Shown: in pieces, positions 1,889 to 47,002 of the stretch
How positions within the stretch are numbered: the first letter of the stretch is position 1
Layout: each line of letters starts with the position of its first letter
Virus record (IMG/VR): IMGVR_UViG_3300042891_000711
Location: 1-64,000 of that record
Strand: one strand, 5' to 3'
DNA length: 64,000 nucleotides
Position numbers and translations under genes: made by a program
The notes under the pieces: model-generated
What the model was told of the DNA's origin: nothing
Databases searched by the model: none
The model's input: the letters and a program-made list of their open reading frames with translations, nothing else

Positions 1889-2788
1889 ATGTCTATCCAG
1901 TCTGATATAAACAATACCACAAGAACACTTTGGACCAGTAAGACTCCTTACAATGCTAACGTATGGGTAGGTGAAATTGGTCAAATATTCTATAACCCTA
2001 CCTTAGGTTGCTTGAGATTAAGTGACGGAGTTACTGCGGGTGGCCTACCATTATGCGACGGAGCAAACGGCAATGTAGGAGCCACTGGAGCAAATGGTGT
2101 TAGCATTTCAAATGCCACAGTAATTGGTGGCAATTTATTAATCACATTTAGTAACAGTTCTGCTATCTGGGCAGGCAATGTTGTTGGACCACAAGGCATT
2201 CAGGGGAATGTTGGACCACAAGGCATTCAGGGGAATGTTGGACCACAAGGCATTCAGGGGAATGTTGGACCACAAGGCATTCAGGGGAATGTTGGACCAG
2301 CAGGTAATACTTTTATAGGTGGTGACTACGGTTCTTTTTATGATATCACTACACAAACAATATCTAATATTGCCCTAGCGTATAAAGTGCCAATTGGTAA
2401 TACTTCGATCAGCTCCGGAGTTTCTATATCCAATAGCAACATTGTAGTTACTACTAGTGGAGTATACGACATACAATACAGCATACAATTCACTAACACA
2501 GACAATGCTAATCATGATATAGATGTTTGGGTTAGGATTAACAATATAAACTTACCAGACAGCAATAGTAGATTTACTATACACAGTCGAAATAGTAATC
2601 CTGGTGGCGCCGTGGGCAAATTGATAGCAGTCACTCCTATAGTTACTAGCCTTAATGCCAGTGACACTGTACAAATAATGTGGGCCACTGATGATATTGG
2701 TATTGCTATTACCACGTTTGCTGAACAGACTAGCCCAATCAGACCAAAGACACCCGGGGTTATCGTTTATGTTAATCAAATTGCGTAA
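1889..2788 (+). CDS. collagen-like fibre protein with C-terminal BclA/C1q-like beta domain
   Basis: (GPQGIQGNV)n Gly-X-Y repeats; N-terminal GEIG...LRLSDGVTAGG phage fibre motif; C-terminal SGVYDIQYSIQ. Confidence 0.75.
   Translation: MSIQSDINNTTRTLWTSKTPYNANVWVGEIGQIFYNPTLGCLRLSDGVTAGGLPLCDGANGNVGATGANGVSISNATVIGGNLLITFSNSSAIWAGNVVGPQGIQGNVGPQGIQGNVGPQGIQGNVGPQGIQGNVGPAGNTFIGGDYGSFYDITTQTISNIALAYKVPIGNTSISSGVSISNSNIVVTTSGVYDIQYSIQFTNTDNANHDIDVWVRINNINLPDSNSRFTIHSRNSNPGGAVGKLIAVTPIVTSLNASDTVQIMWATDDIGIAITTFAEQTSPIRPKTPGVIVYVNQIA
2183..2299 (+). repeat. 27-bp perfect tandem repeat, about 4.3 copies (collagen-coding)
   Basis: GTTGGACCACAAGGCATTCAGGGGAAT x4 plus GTTGGACCA. Confidence 0.95.
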
Positions 2789-2852
2789 TTTTTCTTGACT
2801 ATTATAAACTACCATGTTAAACTATCAGTTACAACTCAATAAATAATTAACT

Positions 2853-4454
2853 ATGTTATTTGGATTATTCATCTTAGCGGTGGCTTTAAGCATTTCAGCC
2901 GTGGCCGCATACTATTCCATAGCTGGATTAACAGCTATTTTTGCCGCGGCAGTAGTGCCTATTATCATTATGGGTGCTGTACTCGAAGTAGGTAAAATTG
3001 CCGCTACTGTATGGCTACATAAATTTTGGCATCGTGCTAACATACAGTTTAAACTTTATCTTGTTCCTGCCATTTTAGTGCTGATGCTGATTACCTCAAT
3101 GGGGATCTTCGGATTTTTGAGCAAGGCCCACATGGATCAAAACATTACAGTAGGCGATAGTGCCGCTCAGGTGCAGATCTTAGATGAAAAGATTAAAACA
3201 GAACAGGATAATATCAGCGTAAACAAACGAGCCCTACAACAAATGGACGCACAAGTGGACCAAATGTTGGGTCGTACCACAGACGATCGGGGTGCCAACC
3301 GTGCTGTACAAATACGTAAGAATCAAGCCAAAGAACGTAAATCATTGCAAGCAGACATCTCAGCCGCACAAAAGAATATATCAGCATTACAAGCAGAACG
3401 TGCTCCACTGGCCGCACAGAATCGTAAGATTGAAGCAGAAGTCGGACCTATCCGTTACATAGCCGCACTTATCTACGGTGATAACCCAGATGCAAACTTA
3501 CTAGAACGTGCTGTACGTTGGGTAATTATCCTACTAGTGTTTGTATTTGACCCATTGGCACTTATCCTTATCCTGGCCGCAGAGCAAACTATTATGTGGG
3601 CTAGAGAAGACAAGCGTAAGAAAGAAGATGAATACGAACTAGACGATGGACAGCTAACCGACGAACAATACGAAAAAATTAAGCAAGAAGCCGATGTTGA
3701 CGATTACATTGCAATGCAAAAGTTCTTTGATGATGGCAAAGAACTAGCCAAGTCAATTGATGACAACGATGGTCGTTTACCTAATAATTATGCTAGCACA
3801 CAAGCATATTTGCATACTCCTTGGGTTTGGCCCGAACGTACTTCAGATGAAGGACTAGTACCTAAACAACAACCAGTTGACGAAGATCCTTTAGATATTC
3901 CTATACCAGAAGGTGAAGAAATGTGGGCTCAAGAGGCTATTGATACAGACACTAGTAAACAAGACTTAGACAATGCTATTAGTTTAATTGCAGAAATGCA
4001 GGCTAAGTTAGATGTGCTACAAGCAGAGCATGATGCTAAACACGAAGAATTGGCACAGATTAAATCAGTTGATCCAGTTACCCTAACAGACCATTTGGGC
4101 AATCCAATTGCCACATATTATCCACAACCACAACAGGTTATCGCACCAGATTTAAGTATCAATGCTGAACTTGATGGTAATAGTGTAAGTGCTGGATTTG
4201 GTACAACCTTCCCAAAAGCTCCAGTCAAGGGTGATCTTTATCTAAGAGTTGACTATTTACCTAGTCGATTATACAAATGGAATGATATCAAGTGGATCGA
4301 AGTAGACAAAACTACAACTGATGTATATTCATATGATACAGAGTATATCAAACATCTAACAAATAAAATAGCATCTGGTGAGTATGATGTGGAATTACTT
4401 ACACCAGCAGAGCAAGAACAAATTCAACAGTATATTAAAAATAATCCTCAATAA
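2853..4454 (+). CDS. membrane protein with coiled coil and acidic C-terminus
   Basis: three N-terminal hydrophobic helices, a heptad region and a fourth TM (VIILLVFVFDPLALILILAA). Confidence 0.7.
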   Translation: MLFGLFILAVALSISAVAAYYSIAGLTAIFAAAVVPIIIMGAVLEVGKIAATVWLHKFWHRANIQFKLYLVPAILVLMLITSMGIFGFLSKAHMDQNITVGDSAAQVQILDEKIKTEQDNISVNKRALQQMDAQVDQMLGRTTDDRGANRAVQIRKNQAKERKSLQADISAAQKNISALQAERAPLAAQNRKIEAEVGPIRYIAALIYGDNPDANLLERAVRWVIILLVFVFDPLALILILAAEQTIMWAREDKRKKEDEYELDDGQLTDEQYEKIKQEADVDDYIAMQKFFDDGKELAKSIDDNDGRLPNNYASTQAYLHTPWVWPERTSDEGLVPKQQPVDEDPLDIPIPEGEEMWAQEAIDTDTSKQDLDNAISLIAEMQAKLDVLQAEHDAKHEELAQIKSVDPVTLTDHLGNPIATYYPQPQQVIAPDLSINAELDGNSVSAGFGTTFPKAPVKGDLYLRVDYLPSRLYKWNDIKWIEVDKTTTDVYSYDTEYIKHLTNKIASGEYDVELLTPAEQEQIQQYIKNNPQ

Positions 4455-4852: not shown

Positions 4853-6766
4853 AGCAAAAATACAATCATAGGTATTGACCTAGGCACCACTAATTCTTGT
4901 GTGGCCATTCTTGAAAATAACAAATCACGTGTAATTGAAAATAACGAAGGTGCTCGTACTACACCAAGTATCGTTGCCTACGGCGATGAAATTATTGTAG
5001 GTGCTAGTGCTAAACGTCAAGCAGTTACTAATCCAAAAAACACAATCTACGCCAGCAAACGACTTATTGGTCGTAAGTTTGATGAAGACGCTGTACAAAA
5101 AGACATTGACCTAATGCCTTACAAGATCGTTAAAAACGAAAATGGTGATGCATGGGTTGAAGTCAACGGTGACAAACTAGCACCTCCACAAATTTCAGCA
5201 GAAGTTCTGCGCAAAATGAAATTGACAGCAGAAGACTATTTAGGTTACAGTGTAACGCAGGCAGTTATCACAGTCCCTGCGTACTTTAACGACAGTCAAA
5301 GACAAGCTACTAAAGATGCTGGTAAGATTGCCGGCTTGGAAGTACTCCGTATTATTAACGAGCCTACTGCGGCCGCACTGGCATTTGGTTGCGATAAAGG
5401 TGATAAGAAAGACCGTAAGATTGCTGTGTATGACCTAGGTGGTGGTACATTTGATATCAGTATCATTGAAATCAGCGACATCGACGGCGAAAAACAATTT
5501 GAAGTATTATCTACCAATGGTGATACATTCCTAGGCGGTGAAGACTTTGACCAACGTATTATGGAATACTTGGTAGATGAGTTTAAGAAAGAGTCTGGCA
5601 TTGACTTAAAACAAGATATGCTAGCCCTACAACGTCTTAAAGAATCAGCTGAAAAAGCTAAAATTGAATTGTCAAGTTCAACACAGACAGATGTAAACTT
5701 ACCTTACATCACTGCTGATGCAACCGGTCCTAAACACTTGTCAGTTAAACTAACACGTAGTAAGTTTGAAAGTTTAGTTGAAGATTTAATTAAACGTTCG
5801 ATTGACCCATGTAAAATTGCTGTTAAAGACTCTGGTATTAACATCAGTGACATTGACGATGTTATCTTAGTCGGTGGTCAGACACGTATGCCTAAAGTAC
5901 AAGAAGCTGTTGAAGCATTCTTTGGTCGTGCACCACGTAAAGACGTTAACCCAGATGAAGCTGTGGCAGTTGGTGCGGCAATTCAAGGTGCGGTATTGGG
6001 TGGCGATAAGACTGATGTATTGTTACTAGACGTAACTCCACTATCATTGGGTATTGAAACAATGGGTGGTATTATGACCAAGCTGATTAAGAAAAATACA
6101 ACTATCCCAACCAAAGCAAGCCAAACATTCTCCACAGCAGAAGACAATCAACCAGCTGTGACTGTTATGGTAGCACAGGGTGAGCGTGAGTTTGTCAAGG
6201 ACAACAAAGTACTTGGTCAGTTCAATTTAGAAGGTATCGAACCACAACGTCGTGGCCAACCGCAGATTGAAATTACACTTGACATCGATGCTAACGGTAT
6301 TCTTAAAGTAAGTGCTAAAGATAAAGCAACTGGCAAAGAAAACAAGATTACTATCAAAGCTAACTCAGGTCTAACCGAAGAAGAAATTGATGCAATGGTA
6401 CGTGATGCAGAAGTTAATGCTGATGCAGATAAAAAATTGCGTGAATTAGTTGATGCACGTAACCAAGCTGAAGCACAGGTTCACGATGTTAAGAAAACTG
6501 TAGAAGAAGCTGGTGACGCGGTAACTGCTGAACAGCATACTGCAATCAATGATGCAATTACCGCGGTTGAAGAAGCCATCAAGGGTGATGATGTAGAAGC
6601 TATTAAATCAGCAATGGTAAAATTAGCAGAACCAGTAGCACCAATCTATCAAGCTAAACAAGCACAAGAGTCAGCAACAGTTGAGCCTGGTGCACAAACA
6701 GCTTCAGATGCGCAAGATGGTGTTGTTGATGCTGAATTTACAGAAGTTGACAAGGAGAGTAAATAA
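4850..6766 (+). CDS. dnaK: Hsp70 chaperone DnaK
   Basis: [31 protein letters not shown]-terminal VVDAEFTEV. Confidence 0.98.
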
Positions 6767-7230
6767 TGAAACAAGTTTACACAACCCTTGACATCCCTAG
6801 CATCTATAAGTTTGCTATCGGCTTCGATGAGTTATTTTCACAACTGCAACACTTAGAGCAACGCGGTAAGGATTCGGGCTACCCACCGTTTAATCTAATT
6901 AAACTAAACGAAACTAACTACGCCATTGAATTAGCAGTAGCTGGTTTTGCTGAAGATGAATTAGATGTAGAAATTGAAAACGGTGAATTAGTTATCCGCG
7001 GCACTAACCGTGAAGTCAGCTTAGAAGAAGCTCTTCATGACCTTGAACATAATCCAGTTGAGTATATCCATCGTGGTATTGCGGCTCGTGACTTTGTTAA
7101 ACGCATCAAGTTAGCCGAGGGTGTAGAAGTTAACTCAGCACACGTTAAGAACGGTATCCTAACAGTTAAATTGGAACAATTCACACCTGAACCAGTTAAA
7201 CAAAAGGTTGCAATTTCTTTCGAAAAGTAG
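6766..7230 (+). CDS. small heat shock protein Hsp20/IbpA family
   Basis: IGFD, YPPFNL, ELAVAGF, YIHRGIAARDF, NGILTV. Confidence 0.95.
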   Translation: MKQVYTTLDIPSIYKFAIGFDELFSQLQHLEQRGKDSGYPPFNLIKLNETNYAIELAVAGFAEDELDVEIENGELVIRGTNREVSLEEALHDLEHNPVEYIHRGIAARDFVKRIKLAEGVEVNSAHVKNGILTVKLEQFTPEPVKQKVAISFEK

Positions 7231-7294
7231 TAGTATAGTAATAAGGGTGGAGGAAACTCCACCCATCCTCAACAAAAATACAAAGAGAGAAGAT

Positions 7295-7600
7295 ATGGCC
7301 AAGGCAATTGCAAAAGTTAAAACAACACCAAACTTATCAGTCAAAGAACCCAGTATGTACAAGGTCATTTATATCAATGATAATGTAACAACTATGGAAT
7401 TTGTTATTGAAAGTCTGCGTGTGGTATTTGATATTGCCGTTGACACTGCAATTGAAATTACACAAACTATTCACGAAGAAGGCAGTGCAACAGTTATTGT
7501 GTTACCTTATGAAATGGCAGAACAAAAAGGTGTTGAAGCAACACAACTTGCTAGAGCAAATGGCTTTCCACTTGTAATTAAACTTGAACCTGCTGCATGA
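7295..7600 (+). CDS. clpS: N-degron adaptor ClpS
   Basis: PSMYKVIYINDNVTTMEFVI...IHEEG...AEQK...FPL; start moved to ATG 7295. Confidence 0.9.
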   Translation: MAKAIAKVKTTPNLSVKEPSMYKVIYINDNVTTMEFVIESLRVVFDIAVDTAIEITQTIHEEGSATVIVLPYEMAEQKGVEATQLARANGFPLVIKLEPAA

Positions 7601-38812: not shown

Positions 38813-39433
38813 ATGTCAACTTTAGTCCCAATGGTAGTAGAACGTACAAGTCAAGGCGAACGTAGCTATGACATTTATTCACGTTTGCTTAAAGATCGTA
38901 TCATCATGTTAGATACAGATGTTAACGAGCATACTGCTAGTTTAATTGTAGCGCAGATGCTGTTCTTAGAAAGCGAAAGCCCAGAGAAAGACATATTGTT
39001 CTATATCAATAGCCCGGGAGGCAGTGTTACAGCAGGTCTAGCTATCTACGATACGATGCAGTTTATTAAATGCGATGTGTCAACTATTGTACTCGGACAA
39101 GCATGTTCAATGGGTAGTTTCCTAGCACAAGCTGGTGCACCAGGCAAGCGTATTGTTCTGCCAGAAGCACGTACAATGATTCACCGTGTTAGTTCGGGTA
39201 CTCCGGGTACACGTGGTTCAGTTCATGTACAAGACCTACAGTTTGAAGATGCTAAACGTAGCTTTGAAGAAAGTGTACGTATTAACAAGCGTTTAACAGA
39301 ACTGTATGCACGCCATAACACTGCTGGTAAAACATATGACGAACTATATGAAGCAATGAAGTTTGATACATTCTTATCAGCAGACGAAGCAGTGGCCTAC
39401 GGTTTAGCTGACGAAGTGATCACTAAACGTTAA
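38813..39433 (+). CDS. clpP: Clp protease proteolytic subunit
   Basis: [39 protein letters not shown]. Confidence 0.95.
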
Positions 39434-40749
39434 TGCTTAAAGATACATTTTGCTCCAGTCCCTGGTTCCATATTAGAATAGATCCTGCGGGTAAATACCT
39501 ACCTTGTCGATGGAGTAGTCACCAAGATACTACAGGTTATACTGTGGCTAACATTACTATTTTAGGATTTATGAACAGTGATATCATGCAAGGTATCCGA
39601 GCTAAGATGTTAGATGGCGAGTCTGTGCCTATGTGTAGTTCATGTCATTATGATGAGTCTAACAATAAAGTAAGTGGTCGGCACCGTCAACTACTTAAAA
39701 GTGCAATTAACGTTGATAATTTTGATAAGACATTTTGCAGCAGTCCGCATTGGCCGATGTTTGAAAATACCTTTGCAAATGCTGAGAATGACAATTATCA
39801 ACCGGTTGATTTTCAAATTGATCTGGGTAATACTTGTAATAGTGCGTGTATTATGTGCTCACCGACTTATAGTAGCAAATTGGCTGCAGAATATCCTAAA
39901 CTAATTAATTTTGAGCCCACGTTATTTAAACAGTCGCAATCTTTTAAGAATTGGGCAGATGATCCGGCTTTGGTAGATAAGTTTGTTAATGAATTGTCAG
40001 CTATTCCTGGTATCAAATACATACATTTCTTAGGTGGCGAGACCCTATACTTAAAAAGTTTTTATGATATCTGCAATCGTTTGATAGAATTAGATCTAGC
40101 TAAAAATATTAGTATAGGTACTACTACTAACTGTACTGTTTACTCTGAAGAGCTTGAATATATTATTCGTAATTTTAAACATGTGCATTTGGGACTTAGT
40201 GTAGAAGCTATACATAACGTTAACGATTATATACGTTACCCTAGCAACATTAAGCAAGTGTCTACAAATATTGCTAGATTTTTACAGTTACGCGAATTAT
40301 ATAATATACAATTGAGCTTGCGCATCACTCCAAACATTTTTAGTATCTATTATTTAGATACTATATTCAAATTGATGCTTACTGAACAAGTTATTGCAGA
40401 AAGTTGTTGGATACTACATAATCCAAGTTGTTTACGTATCGAAGTACTACCTAAAGAATTAATAGCAGTATGTTTAGCTAAAATTAACCAAGTTATCCAA
40501 CAGTATCATTTGGTTCAAGATACTCAGACTATTATTAATCGACGTAGGGAAGATTTAATAGATCCTGTTATCAGCCAGATTATTTTCGAATACAAACATC
40601 TATTAGAAAACGTAATAGTACCCAACAACGTAGAAGAAGAACGCTATAACCTAGTCAAATACATTCGAGCATTTGAGCAAGTACACAATAATACAATTTT
40701 GGATTATCTACCCGAATATGAAGAATTTTTACGAAGCTACGGTTACTAA
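39433..40749 (+). CDS. radical SAM protein with N-terminal twitch/SPASM-like domain
   Basis: FCSSPW..PC..CSSC, CNSACIMC, GGE. Confidence 0.88.
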   Translation: MLKDTFCSSPWFHIRIDPAGKYLPCRWSSHQDTTGYTVANITILGFMNSDIMQGIRAKMLDGESVPMCSSCHYDESNNKVSGRHRQLLKSAINVDNFDKTFCSSPHWPMFENTFANAENDNYQPVDFQIDLGNTCNSACIMCSPTYSSKLAAEYPKLINFEPTLFKQSQSFKNWADDPALVDKFVNELSAIPGIKYIHFLGGETLYLKSFYDICNRLIELDLAKNISIGTTTNCTVYSEELEYIIRNFKHVHLGLSVEAIHNVNDYIRYPSNIKQVSTNIARFLQLRELYNIQLSLRITPNIFSIYYLDTIFKLMLTEQVIAESCWILHNPSCLRIEVLPKELIAVCLAKINQVIQQYHLVQDTQTIINRRREDLIDPVISQIIFEYKHLLENVIVPNNVEEERYNLVKYIRAFEQVHNNTILDYLPEYEEFLRSYGY

Positions 40750-41591: not shown

Positions 41592-41915
41592 ATGTCTTTA
41601 TTTAAAGTAGCAGGTGTTTCAACATTAAATGGTGTTACCAAAGTACGCTTTGCTAATGATTTCGTTAGTCGAGTTAAAATGTTAATTAAGTCAGGTCATA
41701 CTGATATTGAATTAATTGAATTGGCAGAGCCACAGTCTAAATCAGAAGTAGTTAAGTATCTTAAAACCACTGACTTGATGCAAACAGCTCGATATGCAGA
41801 AGCAATTAATCTAGCGGATGAGAAGTATAACCTTAACTATGCAGTTAAATTATCTAAACCCAAAGTAGAGCTAAGTTTGGCTGCTATCAAGGCACGTGCT
41901 GGCATAGTTGCTTAA
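41592..41915 (+). CDS. conserved hypothetical phage protein
   Basis: AGGAG SD; FKVAGVS..NG..KVRFAND. Confidence 0.75.
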   Translation: MSLFKVAGVSTLNGVTKVRFANDFVSRVKMLIKSGHTDIELIELAEPQSKSEVVKYLKTTDLMQTARYAEAINLADEKYNLNYAVKLSKPKVELSLAAIKARAGIVA

Positions 41916-42013: not shown

Positions 42014-42454
42014 ATGCGTAAAATACTAATGTTGTTAACAGCATCTTTGATTCAAACTGCGACGGCTGCTGATTTACCCAGGGAAATGTACATGCCCAAT
42101 GATGCTGGTGGGTTTGTTGTGTTAACCACACGACCATGTACAGTTGAAAAGATAGCAGAAGAATATCCGTATCGTGCTTATGCTACAGAAAGTTCTGAGT
42201 TGGTCAATCACGAAGGATGCTGGAATAGTCCAGACACTTCTGAAGTGCCTACTCAATTGATGTCAAAGTCAGAAGGAGCAGGTCCAGCACCCACTATACG
42301 TGTTATACCTTTGGTTAATACTTGGTGGGTAGAAGCTGGCAGAATGACATTTATGCAACGAAGTTTTAGTCCGGAAAAGAAGAGATATCGTAGTAATGGT
42401 ACAATTGAAATAACGTTGCCGTCGATTGTAGTAAAACCGCAGGAAGTAAAATGA
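42014..42454 (+). CDS. secreted hypothetical protein
   Basis: signal peptide; AGGAGG SD. Confidence 0.7.
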   Translation: MRKILMLLTASLIQTATAADLPREMYMPNDAGGFVVLTTRPCTVEKIAEEYPYRAYATESSELVNHEGCWNSPDTSEVPTQLMSKSEGAGPAPTIRVIPLVNTWWVEAGRMTFMQRSFSPEKKRYRSNGTIEITLPSIVVKPQEVK

Positions 42455-42710: not shown

Positions 42711-42953
42711 ATGTTAGCACGTAGTTTAATATTTGTGGCACTATTAGCAGTGGGTGTAGCACAAGCAGATGAGCAGAGTAATGTTGTTAATCAACAGCAA
42801 CTAGCTAAACGTTCATATGCGGCACCTGTTAAAGAGAAAGAAGTTCTTGAAGGTGCTAGTGTAACAGAAGAAGTAGTAGTTGATAAAAAACATCAGACGT
42901 TGCGTTTACACATGTTAGGAAAACTTCCATACATGGAAAAAGCAACTGATTAA
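42711..42953 (+). CDS. small secreted protein
   Basis: signal peptide ending AQA; AGGAG SD. Confidence 0.75.
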   Translation: MLARSLIFVALLAVGVAQADEQSNVVNQQQLAKRSYAAPVKEKEVLEGASVTEEVVVDKKHQTLRLHMLGKLPYMEKATD

Positions 42954-42960
42954 AGAAATT

Positions 42961-43295
42961 GTTGTAGAAGCTCTAAAGTAATACATGTTGGACGGCGGTT
43001 CGATTCCGCCCAGGTCCACCAAAAGCATATTGTCACTAAGGTCCCGTAAGGATTATGTCTTTGGCAAGATAGTATGCTTCTGATGGGCCTGACCAGGTTT
43101 CGACAGCGTGAGATAGGATAAGAGTCAACACGTGGGGTCACGTAAAATACAAAACTCGTAAATGCAAACGCAAATACAAAAGACGTAGTTAAAGTGTCAA
43201 TGGGTCGTGGCTTCCGCTTCGGTTCACGCACTGAAGCTTTAGCAGCCTAAGAAACTGCTCGTCCGGGGTAGCTATACCTTGTTACCAAAAATAGT
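42961..43295 (+). ncRNA. ssrA: circularly permuted two-piece tmRNA
   Basis: acceptor piece with T-arm GGCGG-TTCGATT-CCGCC and CAGGTCC-A-CCA (ends 43021) precedes the coding piece starting GGGCCTG (43085); G3-U70 pair; tag frame 43164-43250 ending ALAA; outer ends approximate. Confidence 0.93.
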
Positions 43296-43326
43296 AGAAA
43301 GCTCACTTCGGTGGGCTTTCTTTTTG
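43296..43326 (+). terminator. intrinsic terminator after tmRNA
   Basis: AGAAAGCTCAC-TTCG-GTGGGCTTTCT-TTTT. Confidence 0.85.
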
Positions 43327-43386
43327 CTTGACATTTCTATAAAAGAGTGTATAATAGCGTTATAGTTAATTAAGAAGGAAAAGACG

Positions 43387-44535
43387 ATGACAACATACGC
43401 AGATAAAGCAAACAGTTTTTATAATCAGAAAGAGAGTCACTTTATATCCTTGCGCGAACGATTGGTCGAAAGCCTGGGAGATACTTTCGAACCGTTACTA
43501 GATCGAATTGCTGAAGAATTTAAGCGCAGACATACGCAATGGGAACAATTTACTGATTTACAGATTTGTCAAGCAATTATGGTTCCTATGGACAAAATAT
43601 TAATTGACACTACAATGCAACGTAAAGTAAATCTTCAACATATTTTGAATATTTTGCATTATTTTAAAGAAACAATGATCATGGCTATTCAAGTATATGA
43701 AGATCCAACTCGCCCTGGTTATTATATTGCATGGGACGGGCAACACACGGCCCTTGTACTGTATATCTTAGCAACTAAGGTTTTTGGCCAACGTATTGCT
43801 AATTTAATGGTTCCAGTAGTTGTATACAGTATTAAACAAAAAGCAGATATACGTCGTAACTTTATTTTGCTTAATGGTGATGCCAAAGATCCTTTGGATT
43901 TTATTGATATTTTACGTCAGATGATTTGTGGTGTGCGTATCGATGGTAGCGAGGATAAAATTTGGCAAGCTGCCGAACTTAAACAACGCTATTTGGAGAA
44001 AGCTGGATTATTTGCCACCGATGCCAAGTTTGGTGATGAGAATGAATCTGGAGCATTTACTTTGCTTGCAGATACTTTATGTAGTAAAAGTGACAAGACT
44101 CTCAAAGATCCAGAAGTAACTCGAATGTTTGCAGATTATTGGGTATTAATTAACCAAGCTCGACCAGTTGACGCTAAGGAAGCTAGACAGTTATATGAAT
44201 TTTTTGACGCTTGTTTCCGTGAAAATATTACAGTAGATAATGCGTATCTTAAAGAATTTGCGCAGTTTACATTGGATTATTTTGATGCAGATTTTAATTC
44301 AAAAGGTCCGTTTTGGGATAAAGTAAAAATGGCTTATGATAAATGGTATCGTAAGGCTAATCCAGAAGGCGAATTAGATGAACGCACTGGTGAGATTAAG
44401 ATTAAGGGATTCACAAAAGAATGGAAATGTGGAGGGCCGTTCTTACTAGCTCAATTACGTGCGAGTACTAAATTGCAAGTACCTAATTACGATGCAGACA
44501 GTGATTTTGTTCCAGCTAAAAAGGATCTTTGGTAA
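43387..44535 (+). CDS. ParB/DndB-like DGQH-motif protein
   Basis: IDTTMQR...IQVY...YIAWDGQHT...FILLN; own promoter TTGACA-17-TATAAT. Confidence 0.65.
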   Translation: MTTYADKANSFYNQKESHFISLRERLVESLGDTFEPLLDRIAEEFKRRHTQWEQFTDLQICQAIMVPMDKILIDTTMQRKVNLQHILNILHYFKETMIMAIQVYEDPTRPGYYIAWDGQHTALVLYILATKVFGQRIANLMVPVVVYSIKQKADIRRNFILLNGDAKDPLDFIDILRQMICGVRIDGSEDKIWQAAELKQRYLEKAGLFATDAKFGDENESGAFTLLADTLCSKSDKTLKDPEVTRMFADYWVLINQARPVDAKEARQLYEFFDACFRENITVDNAYLKEFAQFTLDYFDADFNSKGPFWDKVKMAYDKWYRKANPEGELDERTGEIKIKGFTKEWKCGGPFLLAQLRASTKLQVPNYDADSDFVPAKKDLW

Positions 44536-45005
44536 TGGCTAAACTACGTACCCCAGACCAAGATAAACATAAGAATTTTAGGTTACTTACTGCGCAGTTG
44601 CGTACTACACCGGTTTGTAAGTTGGAAGATTGTTGCAACCCACTTAGCGACTATGAAGGACCTGGCAGTGATAGTTTATGCCGAGAACATCAACTTGAGC
44701 AAGTCGAGTATGGTGGAATGGGCAAAGCAAGTCGTCCGCATACATTTTACCGTGCTTGGGTATGCACTAAATGTAAGTACGACGCAAGACTCGATCCTGA
44801 GATTTTAGAAATTGAAGATCCATGGGATCAATTGGTAGTTATGCGCGGAGTGATGCATGGTGACCATTTAATTCGTAAGAGTGATGGCGGCAAGGATACT
44901 AAAGAAAACATCAACGCACTTTGCTGTAGATGTCATATGATTAAAACTTATAAAGAGAAAGATTATCTTAAAGGTAATAAAAATAAATCTACAGAAACCC
45001 GTTGA
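44535..45005 (+). CDS. zinc-binding HNH endonuclease
   Basis: CTKC...HGDHLIRKSDGGKDTKENINALCCRCHMIKT; TAATG-coupled to the upstream gene. Confidence 0.85.
   Translation: MAKLRTPDQDKHKNFRLLTAQLRTTPVCKLEDCCNPLSDYEGPGSDSLCREHQLEQVEYGGMGKASRPHTFYRAWVCTKCKYDARLDPEILEIEDPWDQLVVMRGVMHGDHLIRKSDGGKDTKENINALCCRCHMIKTYKEKDYLKGNKNKSTETR

Positions 45006-45093: not shown

Positions 45094-45096
<3 letters not shown>
45030..45096 (+). promoter_or_regulatory. ROSE-like RNA thermometer in the groES 5' UTR
   Basis: hairpin with TGCCT...AGGGC core, then TTATTTGCTT-AATA-AAGGAGTAA pairing UUGCU with the SD. Confidence 0.7.

Positions 45097-47002
<1,906 letters not shown>

What the first reader, a model, noticed from the sequence alone, without database searches (positions are those of the whole stretch)
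42961..43326. Permuted two-piece tmRNA with an unusually long 28-codon tag
Seen: the 3' half (helix-2 strand CATGTTG, T-arm, CAGGTCC-A-CCA) comes first. A 63-nt intervening segment closed by AAGCATATTGTC/GATAGTATGCTT follows, then the 5' half GGGCCTG...CAGCGTG. The tag reads ANANTKDVVKVSMGRGFRFGSRTEALAA, followed by a pseudoknot (GGGGTA/TACCTT, GCTAT/ATAGT) and a terminator. Known: two-piece tmRNAs occur in alphaproteobacteria and some cyanobacteria and betaproteobacteria; proteobacterial tags are about 10 aa; LAA is the ClpX degron. Inference: the 18-residue extension may change adaptor recognition or route tagged proteins to the phage ClpP.
Basis: partly seen in the sequence, partly recalled or inferred. 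Interest (0 to 1): 0.7.

Follow-up and report, generated by a model that had tools for sequence, protein, structure and literature searches.

The report
Jumbo-phage two-piece tmRNA, conserved long tag
A lake-water giant phage carries a genuine circularly permuted (two-piece) tmRNA gene whose 28-residue tag contains a ten-residue core, KVSMGRGFRF, that relatives keep unchanged, so the phage probably marks stalled proteins with its own special signal.

Summary

The window belongs to a 219-kb fragment of a roughly 350-kb freshwater jumbo phage. Two-piece tmRNAs in aquatic phages are already published, so the gene as such is ordinary.

What is new is the tag:
- At least 23 distinct relatives in IMG/VR and JGI contigs carry 28-30-residue tags. 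All lie in one phage clade, between ClpP and GroES/GroEL.
- In members sampled without reference to the tag, the core KVSMGRGFRF shows only synonymous change (pN 0, pS 0.19). The flanks evolve almost freely, indels keep the frame, and the stop codon stays in a covarying hairpin loop.
- The long tag is therefore translated and its peptide is under selection. The C-terminus varies (LAA, VAA, TFA, VLA).

The phage has no SmpB, Lon or SspB. It does encode ClpA (with an IGF loop), ClpP, ClpS, an IbpA-like sHSP and GroES/EL. Routing of tagged proteins to the phage ClpAP is plausible but untested. It is weakened because close relatives with ClpA and ClpP have ordinary 10-residue tags.

Verdict: new variant of a known kind, of moderate interest.

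The parts
42960..43021 (+). Acceptor piece of the tmRNA. It holds the helix-2 5' strands (42960-42964, 42970-42974, 42984-42990), the T-arm (42994-43010), the acceptor 3' strand (43011-43017), discriminator A (43018) and an encoded CCA (43019-43021). Its 5' end is inferred, not mapped.
   Evidence: Rfam alignments; ARAGORN 3' tRNA domain; pairing and compensatory changes in 15 relatives.
43022..43084 (+). 63-nt intervening segment, presumed to be removed in processing. It is a hairpin whose ends pair (43023-43034 with 43068-43079), followed by 5 unpaired bases before G1 of the acceptor stem.
   Evidence: Sequence. In relatives the segment is 27-194 nt long and unrelated in sequence, yet its two ends pair in 14 of 15.
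43085..43326 (+). Coding piece. It holds the acceptor 5' strand GGGCCTG (43085-43091, G3-U70), helix-2 3' strands (43104-43110, 43121-43130), the PK1 hairpin (43131-43142), the tag reading frame, the stop-codon hairpin, the 3' pseudoknot and the terminator.
43164..43250 (+). Tag reading frame of 28 codons plus TAA: ANANTKDVVKVSMGRGFRFGSRTEALAA. The resume codon is GCA at 43164, preceded by GTAAAT.
   Evidence: ARAGORN. The frame is kept in all relatives, and indels are multiples of 3.
43191..43220 (+). Invariant tag core K-V-S-M-G-R-G-F-R-F (tag residues 10-19).
   Evidence: In 10 distinct relatives sampled without reference to the tag, 6 variable sites are all synonymous: pN 0.000, pS 0.194. 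The flanks show pN 0.29-0.35.
43241..43259 (+). Hairpin (helix 5) with the stop codon in its loop: AGCAG / CTGCT.
   Evidence: Fully compensated in relatives: GTTTG/CAAAC and GTTTTAG/CTAAAAC.
43265..43295 (+). 3' H-type pseudoknot. Stem 1 pairs 43265-43269 with 43276-43280. Stem 2 pairs 43271-43275 with 43291-43295.
   Evidence: Pairing with compensatory changes, for example GGTTA/TAACC in L125 and GTTAT/ATAAC in L127 and L128. It matches the Rfam beta_tmRNA 3' stem.
43296..43326 (+). Intrinsic terminator (11-bp stem, TTCG loop, T run).
   Evidence: covaries in relatives.
38813..39433 (+). Phage ClpP. It is the conserved left neighbour of the tmRNA module.
   Evidence: Pfam CLP_protease 219 bits; NCBIfam ClpP 256 bits. 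It is syntenic with the tmRNA wherever a long-tag locus reaches that far, and all 14 long-tag contigs searched whole carry it.
45094..47002 (+). GroES (45094-45387) and GroEL (45365-47002). They are the conserved right neighbours of the tmRNA module.
   Evidence: Pfam Cpn10 and Cpn60; synteny.
6766..7600 (+). IbpA-like small heat-shock protein (6766-7230) and ClpS adaptor (7295-7600). Both belong to the phage's protein-quality-control set. The ClpA gene lies outside the window at 85450-87759 of the same contig.
   Evidence: NCBIfam IbpA 100.7 bits and ClpS 71 bits; Pfam ClpS; ClpA TIGR02639 829 bits over its full length.

Best explanation
This is a working phage-encoded, circularly permuted tmRNA gene.

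Inferred from how two-piece tmRNAs work in bacteria: it is transcribed as one precursor that ends at the terminator at 43296-43326. Host tRNA-processing enzymes cut out the 63-nt hairpin spacer, leaving an acceptor piece of about 62 nt and a coding piece of about 240 nt held together by the acceptor stem and helix 2. Host AlaRS charges it through the G3-U70 pair. Host SmpB, since the phage has none, delivers it to stalled ribosomes.

Shown by comparison: translation resumes at GCA 43164 and runs through all 28 codons.

Inferred: the tag has two parts. One is a loosely constrained small or hydrophobic C-terminus, the usual kind of degron end. The other is an invariant internal decapeptide, KVSMGRGFRF, acquired as part of an 18-residue insertion in one subclade of roughly 350-kb freshwater phages. 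The decapeptide acts as a second, sequence-specific recognition element for a partner not yet identified. The phage's own ClpA/ClpP(/ClpS) is the leading candidate, but only a candidate.
For: Gene identity:
- ARAGORN and two Rfam models above their gathering scores.
- G1-C, G2-C and G3-U are invariant, while acceptor positions 4-7, the T-stem, helix 2a, the PK1 hairpin, the stop-codon hairpin and the 3' pseudoknot change with compensation across 15 relatives.
- The spacer varies from 27 to 194 nt, but its ends pair in 14 of 15 relatives.

Translation of the whole tag:
- The resume context GTAAAT|GC is conserved. All indels inside the frame are multiples of 3. The stop codon sits in the hairpin loop.
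- In members sampled without reference to the tag, the core has pN 0.000 and pS 0.194, against pN 0.29 and 0.35 in the flanks. All 6 variable core sites are synonymous, where 21 of 90 possible changes would be, giving about 1.6e-4 (my own calculation from the codons).
- No conserved RNA pairing was found inside the frame.
- The core stays the same while the tRNA-like domain is exchanged or heavily diverged, as in L130 (the complete 329-kb genome G003), L144, L119 and L125.

Dependence on the host: no SmpB in 5 clade genomes, one of them complete.

Expression: in two lake metatranscriptomes, contigs covering the 5' part of the coding piece reach depth 2300-3700. The upstream gene reaches 11-26 and the downstream gene 0. 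DNA runs give a flat depth of about 60 for this strain.

Protease context: ClpP, ClpA with an IGF loop, ClpS, sHSP and GroES/EL are present. No Lon and no SspB.
Against: - Processing, alanylation, SmpB binding and tagging were not observed. The RNA contigs mix several relatives, and one spans the spacer, so they say nothing about cleavage.
- Synonymous divergence in the core (0.19) is about half that of the flanks (0.30-0.40). An added nucleotide-level constraint is therefore not excluded.
- The number of independent lineages is small (about 5-6).
- No partner for the core was found. The complex prediction with ClpA and ClpS gave no answer.
- Relatives with ClpA and ClpP have 10-residue tags.
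- No promoter for the tmRNA was recognised.
Confidence: 0.72

Rival explanations
1. The 54-nt insertion is kept for an RNA-level reason, such as a structure, a protein-binding site on the RNA, or a spacing element in the mRNA-like domain. On this view the peptide sequence is incidental.
For: 22 nt of the core are identical in most relatives. Synonymous divergence in the core is lower than in the flanks.
Against: - Every change in the core is third-position and synonymous.
- RNAalifold finds only a weak fold with essentially no covariation (-0.08). The proposed GCTTCG/CTGAAGC pairing is lost in L024 and L071.
- The frame is kept across the indels.
Confidence: 0.1
2. The conserved core has a role other than proteolysis. 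It might act on the ribosome during or after tagging. It might send tagged chains to a chaperone or to aggregates (GroEL, sHSP). Or it might give tagged products an activity of their own.
For: - The conservation pattern is the reverse of classical ssrA tags: the C-terminus varies and the middle is fixed.
- The gene sits beside GroES/EL.
- ClpAP relatives manage with 10-residue tags.
Against: - All C-termini are still small or hydrophobic, degron-like ends (LAA, VAA, TFA, VLA, LAV).
- There is no direct evidence for any alternative partner.
Confidence: 0.15
3. Translation resumes further downstream, so the real tag is of normal length.
For: None found.
Against: - The conserved resume context lies 9-11 codons upstream of the core and in frame with it in every relative.
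- Selection in the core is on the amino-acid sequence.
- Rfam aligns the consensus resume site to 43164.
Confidence: 0.02
4. The gene is a decoy that blocks host trans-translation, as reported for the frame-less tmRNA of mycobacteriophage DS6A. Alternatively, it is a non-functional remnant of a captured host gene or attachment site.
For: Phages do carry tmRNA fragments, and a frame-less inhibitory form is known (PMC11915505, PMC9004378).
Against: - All parts of a complete tmRNA are intact and covary across a diverged clade (GroEL 76-98% and ClpP 66-100% identical).
- The reading frame is under purifying selection.
- Family-level RNA is abundant.
Confidence: 0.03

Closest known systems
Two-piece tmRNA (ssrA) of Methylophilales phage Melnitz and other aquatic phages (PMC9004378)
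   Same: Both are phage-encoded, circularly permuted tmRNA genes in large aquatic myophage-type genomes without SmpB. That paper counted 53 two-piece forms among 133 unique phage tmRNAs, 50 of them aquatic.
   Different: No sequence match to any record of the cultured-phage collection. This gene is of the beta type rather than the alpha type by Rfam, and Rfam found no riboswitch in the window. The tag is 28 residues with an invariant internal core. The gene is embedded in a ClpP...GroES/EL module.
Betaproteobacterial two-piece tmRNA (Rfam RF01850; Sharkady and Williams 2004, cited in PMC9004378)
   Same: Same gene order, helix-2 layout, stop-codon hairpin and single 3' pseudoknot. The score is above the family's gathering score. 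The N-terminal AN.. and C-terminal ALAA of the tag resemble bacterial ANDE.FALAA tags.
   Different: It is carried by a phage. The exact tRNA-like 3' end occurs in 115 viral contigs but in only 7 records from 6 of about 185,000 bacterial species genomes; 5 of those 7 are Cupriavidus loci where ARAGORN finds a permuted tmRNA, in genomes that also have a standard tmRNA. It has an 18-residue insertion in the tag.
Long ssrA tags of Mycoplasma (27 residues) read by Lon (Gur and Sauer 2008, via PMC8403727)
   Same: Both are unusually long tags in which added sequence information, not just the C-terminus, determines which protease recognises the tagged protein.
   Different: There is no sequence similarity. 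Neither the phage nor its relatives encode Lon. The recognising partner here is unknown.
Bipartite E. coli ssrA tag (SspB binds AANDENY, ClpX binds LAA; established knowledge)
   Same: The logic is a tag with an upstream adaptor-binding element plus a C-terminal degron.
   Different: No SspB homologue in the phage clade. The conserved element is a basic and aromatic decapeptide in mid-tag, and the C-terminus is the variable part.
tmRNAs of huge phages (Al-Shayeb et al. 2020, PMC7162821) and one-piece tmRNAs of cluster C mycobacteriophages
   Same: Large phages supplementing host translation and rescue functions.
   Different: Those reports do not describe a conserved extended tag. Some of those huge phages also carry SmpB, which this clade lacks.

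Membership tests
tmRNA, permuted (two-piece) form | tRNA-like domain: a 7-bp acceptor stem formed by two separate strands, plus a T-arm | tested here: met
   43085-43091 pairs with 43011-43017. T-arm at 42994-43010. Compensatory changes in relatives.
tmRNA, permuted (two-piece) form | G3-U70 wobble pair (alanine identity), with discriminator A and 3' CCA | tested here: met
   G43087 pairs with T43015. A43018 and CCA 43019-43021 are encoded. G3-U is invariant in 15 relatives.
tmRNA, permuted (two-piece) form | Circular permutation: the acceptor 3' half lies upstream of the 5' half, separated by an intervening segment | tested here: met
   ARAGORN 'Permuted'. The 3' domain precedes the 5' domain, with a 63-nt spacer.
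tmRNA, permuted (two-piece) form | Score above the curated Rfam thresholds | tested here: met
   RF04321: 111.3 bits against 47. RF01850: 97.7 bits against 84.
tmRNA, permuted (two-piece) form | Tag reading frame with a conserved resume context, ending in a hairpin loop | tested here: met
   GTAAAT|GCA at 43158-43166. TAA 43248-43250 in the loop of 43241-43259. The hairpin covaries.
tmRNA, permuted (two-piece) form | The precursor is cleaved into two stable RNAs | tested here: inconclusive
   Metatranscriptome contigs show abundant family RNA. They are mixtures of relatives, and one spans the spacer.
tmRNA, permuted (two-piece) form | Alanylation, SmpB binding and tagging of stalled chains | not testable with these tools
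   No SmpB in the phage or in 4 relatives, so a host SmpB would be needed.
ClpX-type ssrA degron (C-terminal LAA) | C-terminal L-A-A conserved in the family | tested here: not met
   This gene ends in ALAA. Relatives end in VAA, TFA, VLA or LAV. The C-terminus is only loosely constrained (pN 0.35).
   14 of 14 long-tag contigs carry ClpP. All belong to one clade with one synteny. Relatives with ClpP and ClpA have 10-residue tags.
   Complex prediction of ClpA + ClpS + tag scored 0.00, verdict 'no answer'.

The most novel reading that the evidence does not exclude
The KVSMGRGFRF core is a virus-specific degron or adaptor-binding element. It would make phage tmRNA tagging orthogonal to the host's. 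Chains rescued by the phage tmRNA would be recognised by a phage-encoded factor (ClpA N-domain, ClpS or an unannotated adaptor) and fed to the phage ClpAP. That would give the phage a private rescue-and-recycling channel during infection.
Probability: 0.2. Interest if true: 0.8.

Novelty: new variant of a known kind. Interest (0 to 1): 0.55.

Why it matters
Phage tmRNAs are usually treated as spare copies of a host function. Here the tag itself has been remodelled. An 18-residue insertion has a ten-residue core more conserved than the phage's own ClpP or GroEL, in a clade that also carries a full ClpA/ClpP/ClpS, sHSP and GroES/EL set.

If the core is a recognition signal, a virus would be writing its own label on failed translation products. 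That bears on how giant phages manage host ribosomes and amino-acid recycling. [quoted passage not shown]

Even without a known partner, the family is a clean natural experiment on which parts of a tmRNA tag are under selection.

Tried and rejected
- **Cultured phages.** A distant-mode nucleotide search found no relative of the tmRNA. The nearest cultured-phage ClpA is only about 43% identical, for example PA5oct.
- **Literature.** The motif GRGFRF occurs in no paper of the library.
- **RNA structure inside the frame.** RNAalifold gave a weak fold without covariation, so I rejected this as the main constraint.
- **Evidence of processing from public RNA runs.** The contigs are mixtures of relatives, and contig depths are flat averages. 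Inconclusive.
- **Host assignment.** The exact tRNA-like 3' end occurs in only 7 bacterial records: six Cupriavidus contigs (ARAGORN finds a permuted tmRNA in five) and one Berkelbacteria MAG contig with none; the Cupriavidus copies are extra, beside a standard tmRNA. A sample of 151 Burkholderiales genomes gave 4 with beta-type permuted tmRNA; the four best-scoring loci checked (three of them chromosomal-looking, one the extra Cupriavidus copy) have 10-residue tags, and no names were attached. The host remains unknown.
- **Adaptor candidates beside the gene.** The conserved small ORFs at 41592-41915 and 42014-42454 gave no functional lead. The ORFs at 42014-42454 and 42711-42953 have signal peptides, so they are unlikely to be cytoplasmic adaptors.
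- **Complex prediction.** ClpA + ClpS + tag returned 'no answer', which is not evidence either way.
- **Repeat of the core elsewhere.** The motif does not recur in the 219-kb contig.
- **Caveat handled.** The two pattern scans for the core fix its amino acids by construction. The selection test therefore used only members found through the tRNA-like end or through ClpP.

Full report
**1. Observation**

ARAGORN finds one gene in the window and in the whole 218,902-nt contig: a permuted tmRNA at 42929-43341 (+) with the tag ANANTKDVVKVSMGRGFRFGSRTEALAA. Rfam gives two matches above the curated thresholds:
- tmRNA_permuted RF04321: 111.3 bits against 47, E 7e-21.
- beta_tmRNA RF01850: 97.7 bits against 84, E 1.9e-28.

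The parts, in window coordinates:
- helix-2 5' strands at 42960-42964, 42970-42974 and 42984-42990
- T-arm at 42994-43010
- acceptor 3' strand at 43011-43017, discriminator A at 43018, CCA at 43019-43021
- a 63-nt spacer at 43022-43084
- acceptor 5' strand at 43085-43091, with a G3-U70 pair
- helix-2 3' strands at 43104-43110 and 43121-43130
- a hairpin at 43131-43142
- resume codon GCA at 43164
- stop codon TAA at 43248-43250, in the loop of the hairpin 43241-43259
- an H-type pseudoknot at 43265-43295
- a terminator at 43296-43326

**2. What genome this is**

The window is the first 64 kb of an IMG/VR virus record. The record is linear and 62% complete by CheckV, so the genome is about 350 kb. 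Public runs that hold the sequence are lake-water metagenomes. ClpP relatives of 77-100% identity occur in at least 588 IMG/VR contigs, including near-complete genomes of 320-354 kb.

The contig encodes an unusually full protein-quality-control set:
- an IbpA-like sHSP (6766-7230)
- ClpS (7295-7600)
- ClpP (38813-39433)
- GroES/GroEL (45094-47002)
- outside the window, a 769-residue ClpA with an IGF loop (contig 85450-87759)

It has no SmpB, Lon or SspB. Neither do four relatives, one of them the complete 329-kb genome G003.

**3. Relatives of the tmRNA**

The exact 32-nt T-arm-plus-acceptor end occurs in 115 IMG/VR contigs, and ARAGORN finds a permuted tmRNA in 107 of them (108 counting this window's own locus). 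It occurs in only 7 records from 6 of about 185,000 bacterial species genomes: six Cupriavidus contigs and one Berkelbacteria MAG contig. ARAGORN finds a permuted tmRNA in five of the six Cupriavidus loci, and those genomes also have their own standard tmRNA. This tRNA-like domain is therefore mainly a mobile-element and phage lineage.

Among the 107 tags, 60 are 10 residues long and 92 are 10-15. A subset carries 28-30-residue tags that share the core KVSMGRGFRF. Further scans brought the total to 23 distinct tag sequences.

Every long-tag locus has the same neighbourhood, as far as its flanks reach: ClpP, a radical-SAM protein, small ORFs, the tmRNA, GroES, GroEL and a structural protein. 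All 14 long-tag contigs tested carry a true ClpP. The long tag is thus a trait of one subclade.

**4. Structure is supported by covariation**

Fifteen relatives were aligned and the pairs tabulated by script.
- G1-C, G2-C and G3-U never change.
- Acceptor positions 4-7 occur as five different pair sets, all of which pair (one of them, in L119 and L145, after correcting a one-base alignment shift).
- The T-stem has five variants; four pair fully and L144's pairs at four of five positions. Helix 2a has seven; five pair fully, L144 has one mismatch and L127 three in this alignment.
- The PK1 hairpin, the two pseudoknot stems and the terminator also change with compensation.
- The stop-codon hairpin is AGCAG/CTGCT here, GTTTG/CAAAC in L024 and GTTTTAG/CTAAAAC in L037.
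- The spacer ranges from 27 to 194 nt with unrelated sequences, yet its two ends pair in 14 of 15 and leave 3-6 free bases before G1. This is what is expected of a segment removed by tRNA-type processing.

**5. The long tag is translated and its core peptide is under selection**

The context GTAAAT|GC precedes the first codon in 14 of 15 relatives. The three indels inside the frame are each 3 nt.

The two pattern scans for the core fix its amino acids by construction. I therefore restricted the test to 10 distinct sequences found through the tRNA-like end or through ClpP. The results:

| Segment | pN | pS |
|---|---|---|
| Core, 10 codons | 0.000 | 0.194 |
| N-terminal flank | 0.285 | 0.396 |
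| C-terminal flank | 0.349 | 0.303 |

Six core sites vary, and all six are third-position synonymous changes. Only 21 of the 90 possible single changes are synonymous, so the chance of this is about 1.6e-4 (my calculation from the codons).

RNAalifold finds no covarying structure in the frame. The core is unchanged even where the tRNA-like domain has been replaced or has diverged strongly, as in G003 (L130), L144, L119 and L125. It is also unchanged while ClpP falls to 66% identity and GroEL to 76%.

The C-terminus is not conserved (LAA, VAA, TFA, VLA, LAV). This is the reverse of the pattern in classical ssrA tags.

**6. Expression**

In two lake metatranscriptomes, contigs over the 5' part of the coding piece reach depths of 2300-3700. 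The upstream gene reaches 11-26 and the downstream gene 0. In DNA runs this strain's contigs are flat at about 60 across the region, and the summed depth rises only a few-fold over conserved parts. The family's RNA is therefore abundant. These data are mixtures of relatives and cannot show cleavage.

**7. Mechanism**

Shown: a complete, selectively maintained permuted tmRNA gene; a 28-codon frame under peptide-level selection; no phage SmpB.

Inferred from established tmRNA biology: spacer removal by RNase P and 3' processing, charging by AlaRS through G3-U70, delivery by host SmpB and EF-Tu, and tagging.

Inferred from the conservation pattern: the core is a specific recognition element added to a generic hydrophobic degron end.

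The phage ClpA/ClpP/ClpS set is the obvious candidate receptor. Three near-complete relatives that encode ClpP (82-84% identical) and ClpA (54-65%) have ordinary 10-residue tags: ANDEQFLMVA, ANDSQFLMVA and ANDSQFALAA. ClpAP phages therefore do not need the extension. A complex prediction gave no answer. The partner remains open.

**8. Comparison with what is known, and novelty**

Two-piece tmRNAs in aquatic phages are published. Examples are Melnitz, and 53 of 133 unique phage tmRNAs in one survey (PMC9004378). tmRNAs in huge phages are also published (PMC7162821). The tmRNA database holds 79 phage sequences, and its commonest tag length is 10 (PMC11915505). Long tags that switch protease specificity are known from Mycoplasma (27 residues, Lon; PMC8403727).

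I found no description of this tag. The motif is in no paper searched, and no cultured phage record matches.

The gene is a member of a known kind. The conserved extended tag in a ClpAPS/GroESL-bearing jumbo-phage clade is a new variant.

**9. Verdict**

The identification is supported. The functional inference is open. Interest is moderate (0.55). The most novel reading still allowed is a private phage degron, with a probability of about 0.2.

Noticed in passing
window 6766-7600, 38813-39433, 45094-47002; contig 85450-87759 (L160:451-2760): The phage carries a whole protein-quality-control kit: IbpA-like sHSP, ClpS, ClpP, GroES/GroEL, and a full-length ClpA with an IGF ClpP-docking loop (NIGFGRD). 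Four relatives also have ClpA, ClpP and ClpS.
   Followed up: partly
window 43387-45005: A 382-residue protein with a weak DGQHR-like motif (AWDGQH; 14 bits, below threshold) and an HNH endonuclease sit between the tmRNA terminator and GroES. Neither matches any relative's locus, so this looks like a recent insertion beside the tmRNA gene. A perfect TTGACA-16-TATAAT promoter (43328-43355) precedes it.
   Followed up: partly
L010, L049, L097, L099 (IMG/VR contigs): A second, unrelated family of extended tags (26-31 residues, shared core F-D/E-F-..-F-T-G-N-T-V) occurs on permuted tmRNAs with the same tRNA-like 3' end, in other viral contigs that show no match to this window's ClpP...GroEL neighbour genes. 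Tag extension has therefore happened more than once in phage tmRNAs.
   Followed up: no
L130/L138/L147/L151 (G003, complete 329,321-nt genome), L144, L119/L145: The long-tag coding module is combined with quite different tRNA-like domains. G003 has acceptor GGGGATG/CATCTCC, an odd T-loop and a best Rfam match to alpha_tmRNA, and ARAGORN misses it. L119 and L145 do not encode the 3' CCA. This suggests module exchange or fast adaptation of the tRNA-like half, perhaps to different hosts.
   Followed up: partly
whole contig G000 (218,902 nt), compared with G001, G002, G003 and G005: This contig has no tRNA gene at all. Four relatives have arrays of 12-28 tRNAs, about 14-25 kb from ClpP on the side away from the tmRNA. 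In this genome that position would fall inside the window (around 14-22 kb). The array seems to be missing or moved.
   Followed up: partly
L153-L157 (Cupriavidus genomes G031-G034): Several Cupriavidus genomes hold an extra permuted tmRNA (tag ANDEKFALAA in four loci; a fifth, L157, is called with a different 17-residue tag) with the phage-type tRNA-like end, in addition to their standard one-piece tmRNA. It is probably carried by a prophage or another mobile element.
   Followed up: partly
window 39433-40749: A radical-SAM/SPASM protein lies directly after ClpP, overlapping its stop codon. It is detected next to ClpP in nine of the long-tag loci (28-70% identical). Its role is unknown.
   Followed up: no
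window 42014-42454 and 42711-42953: Two small proteins with signal peptides lie just upstream of the tmRNA. One is possibly a lipocalin- or NlpE-like fold, judged by weak structural neighbours. Both recur in several relatives but have no assignable function.
   Followed up: partly
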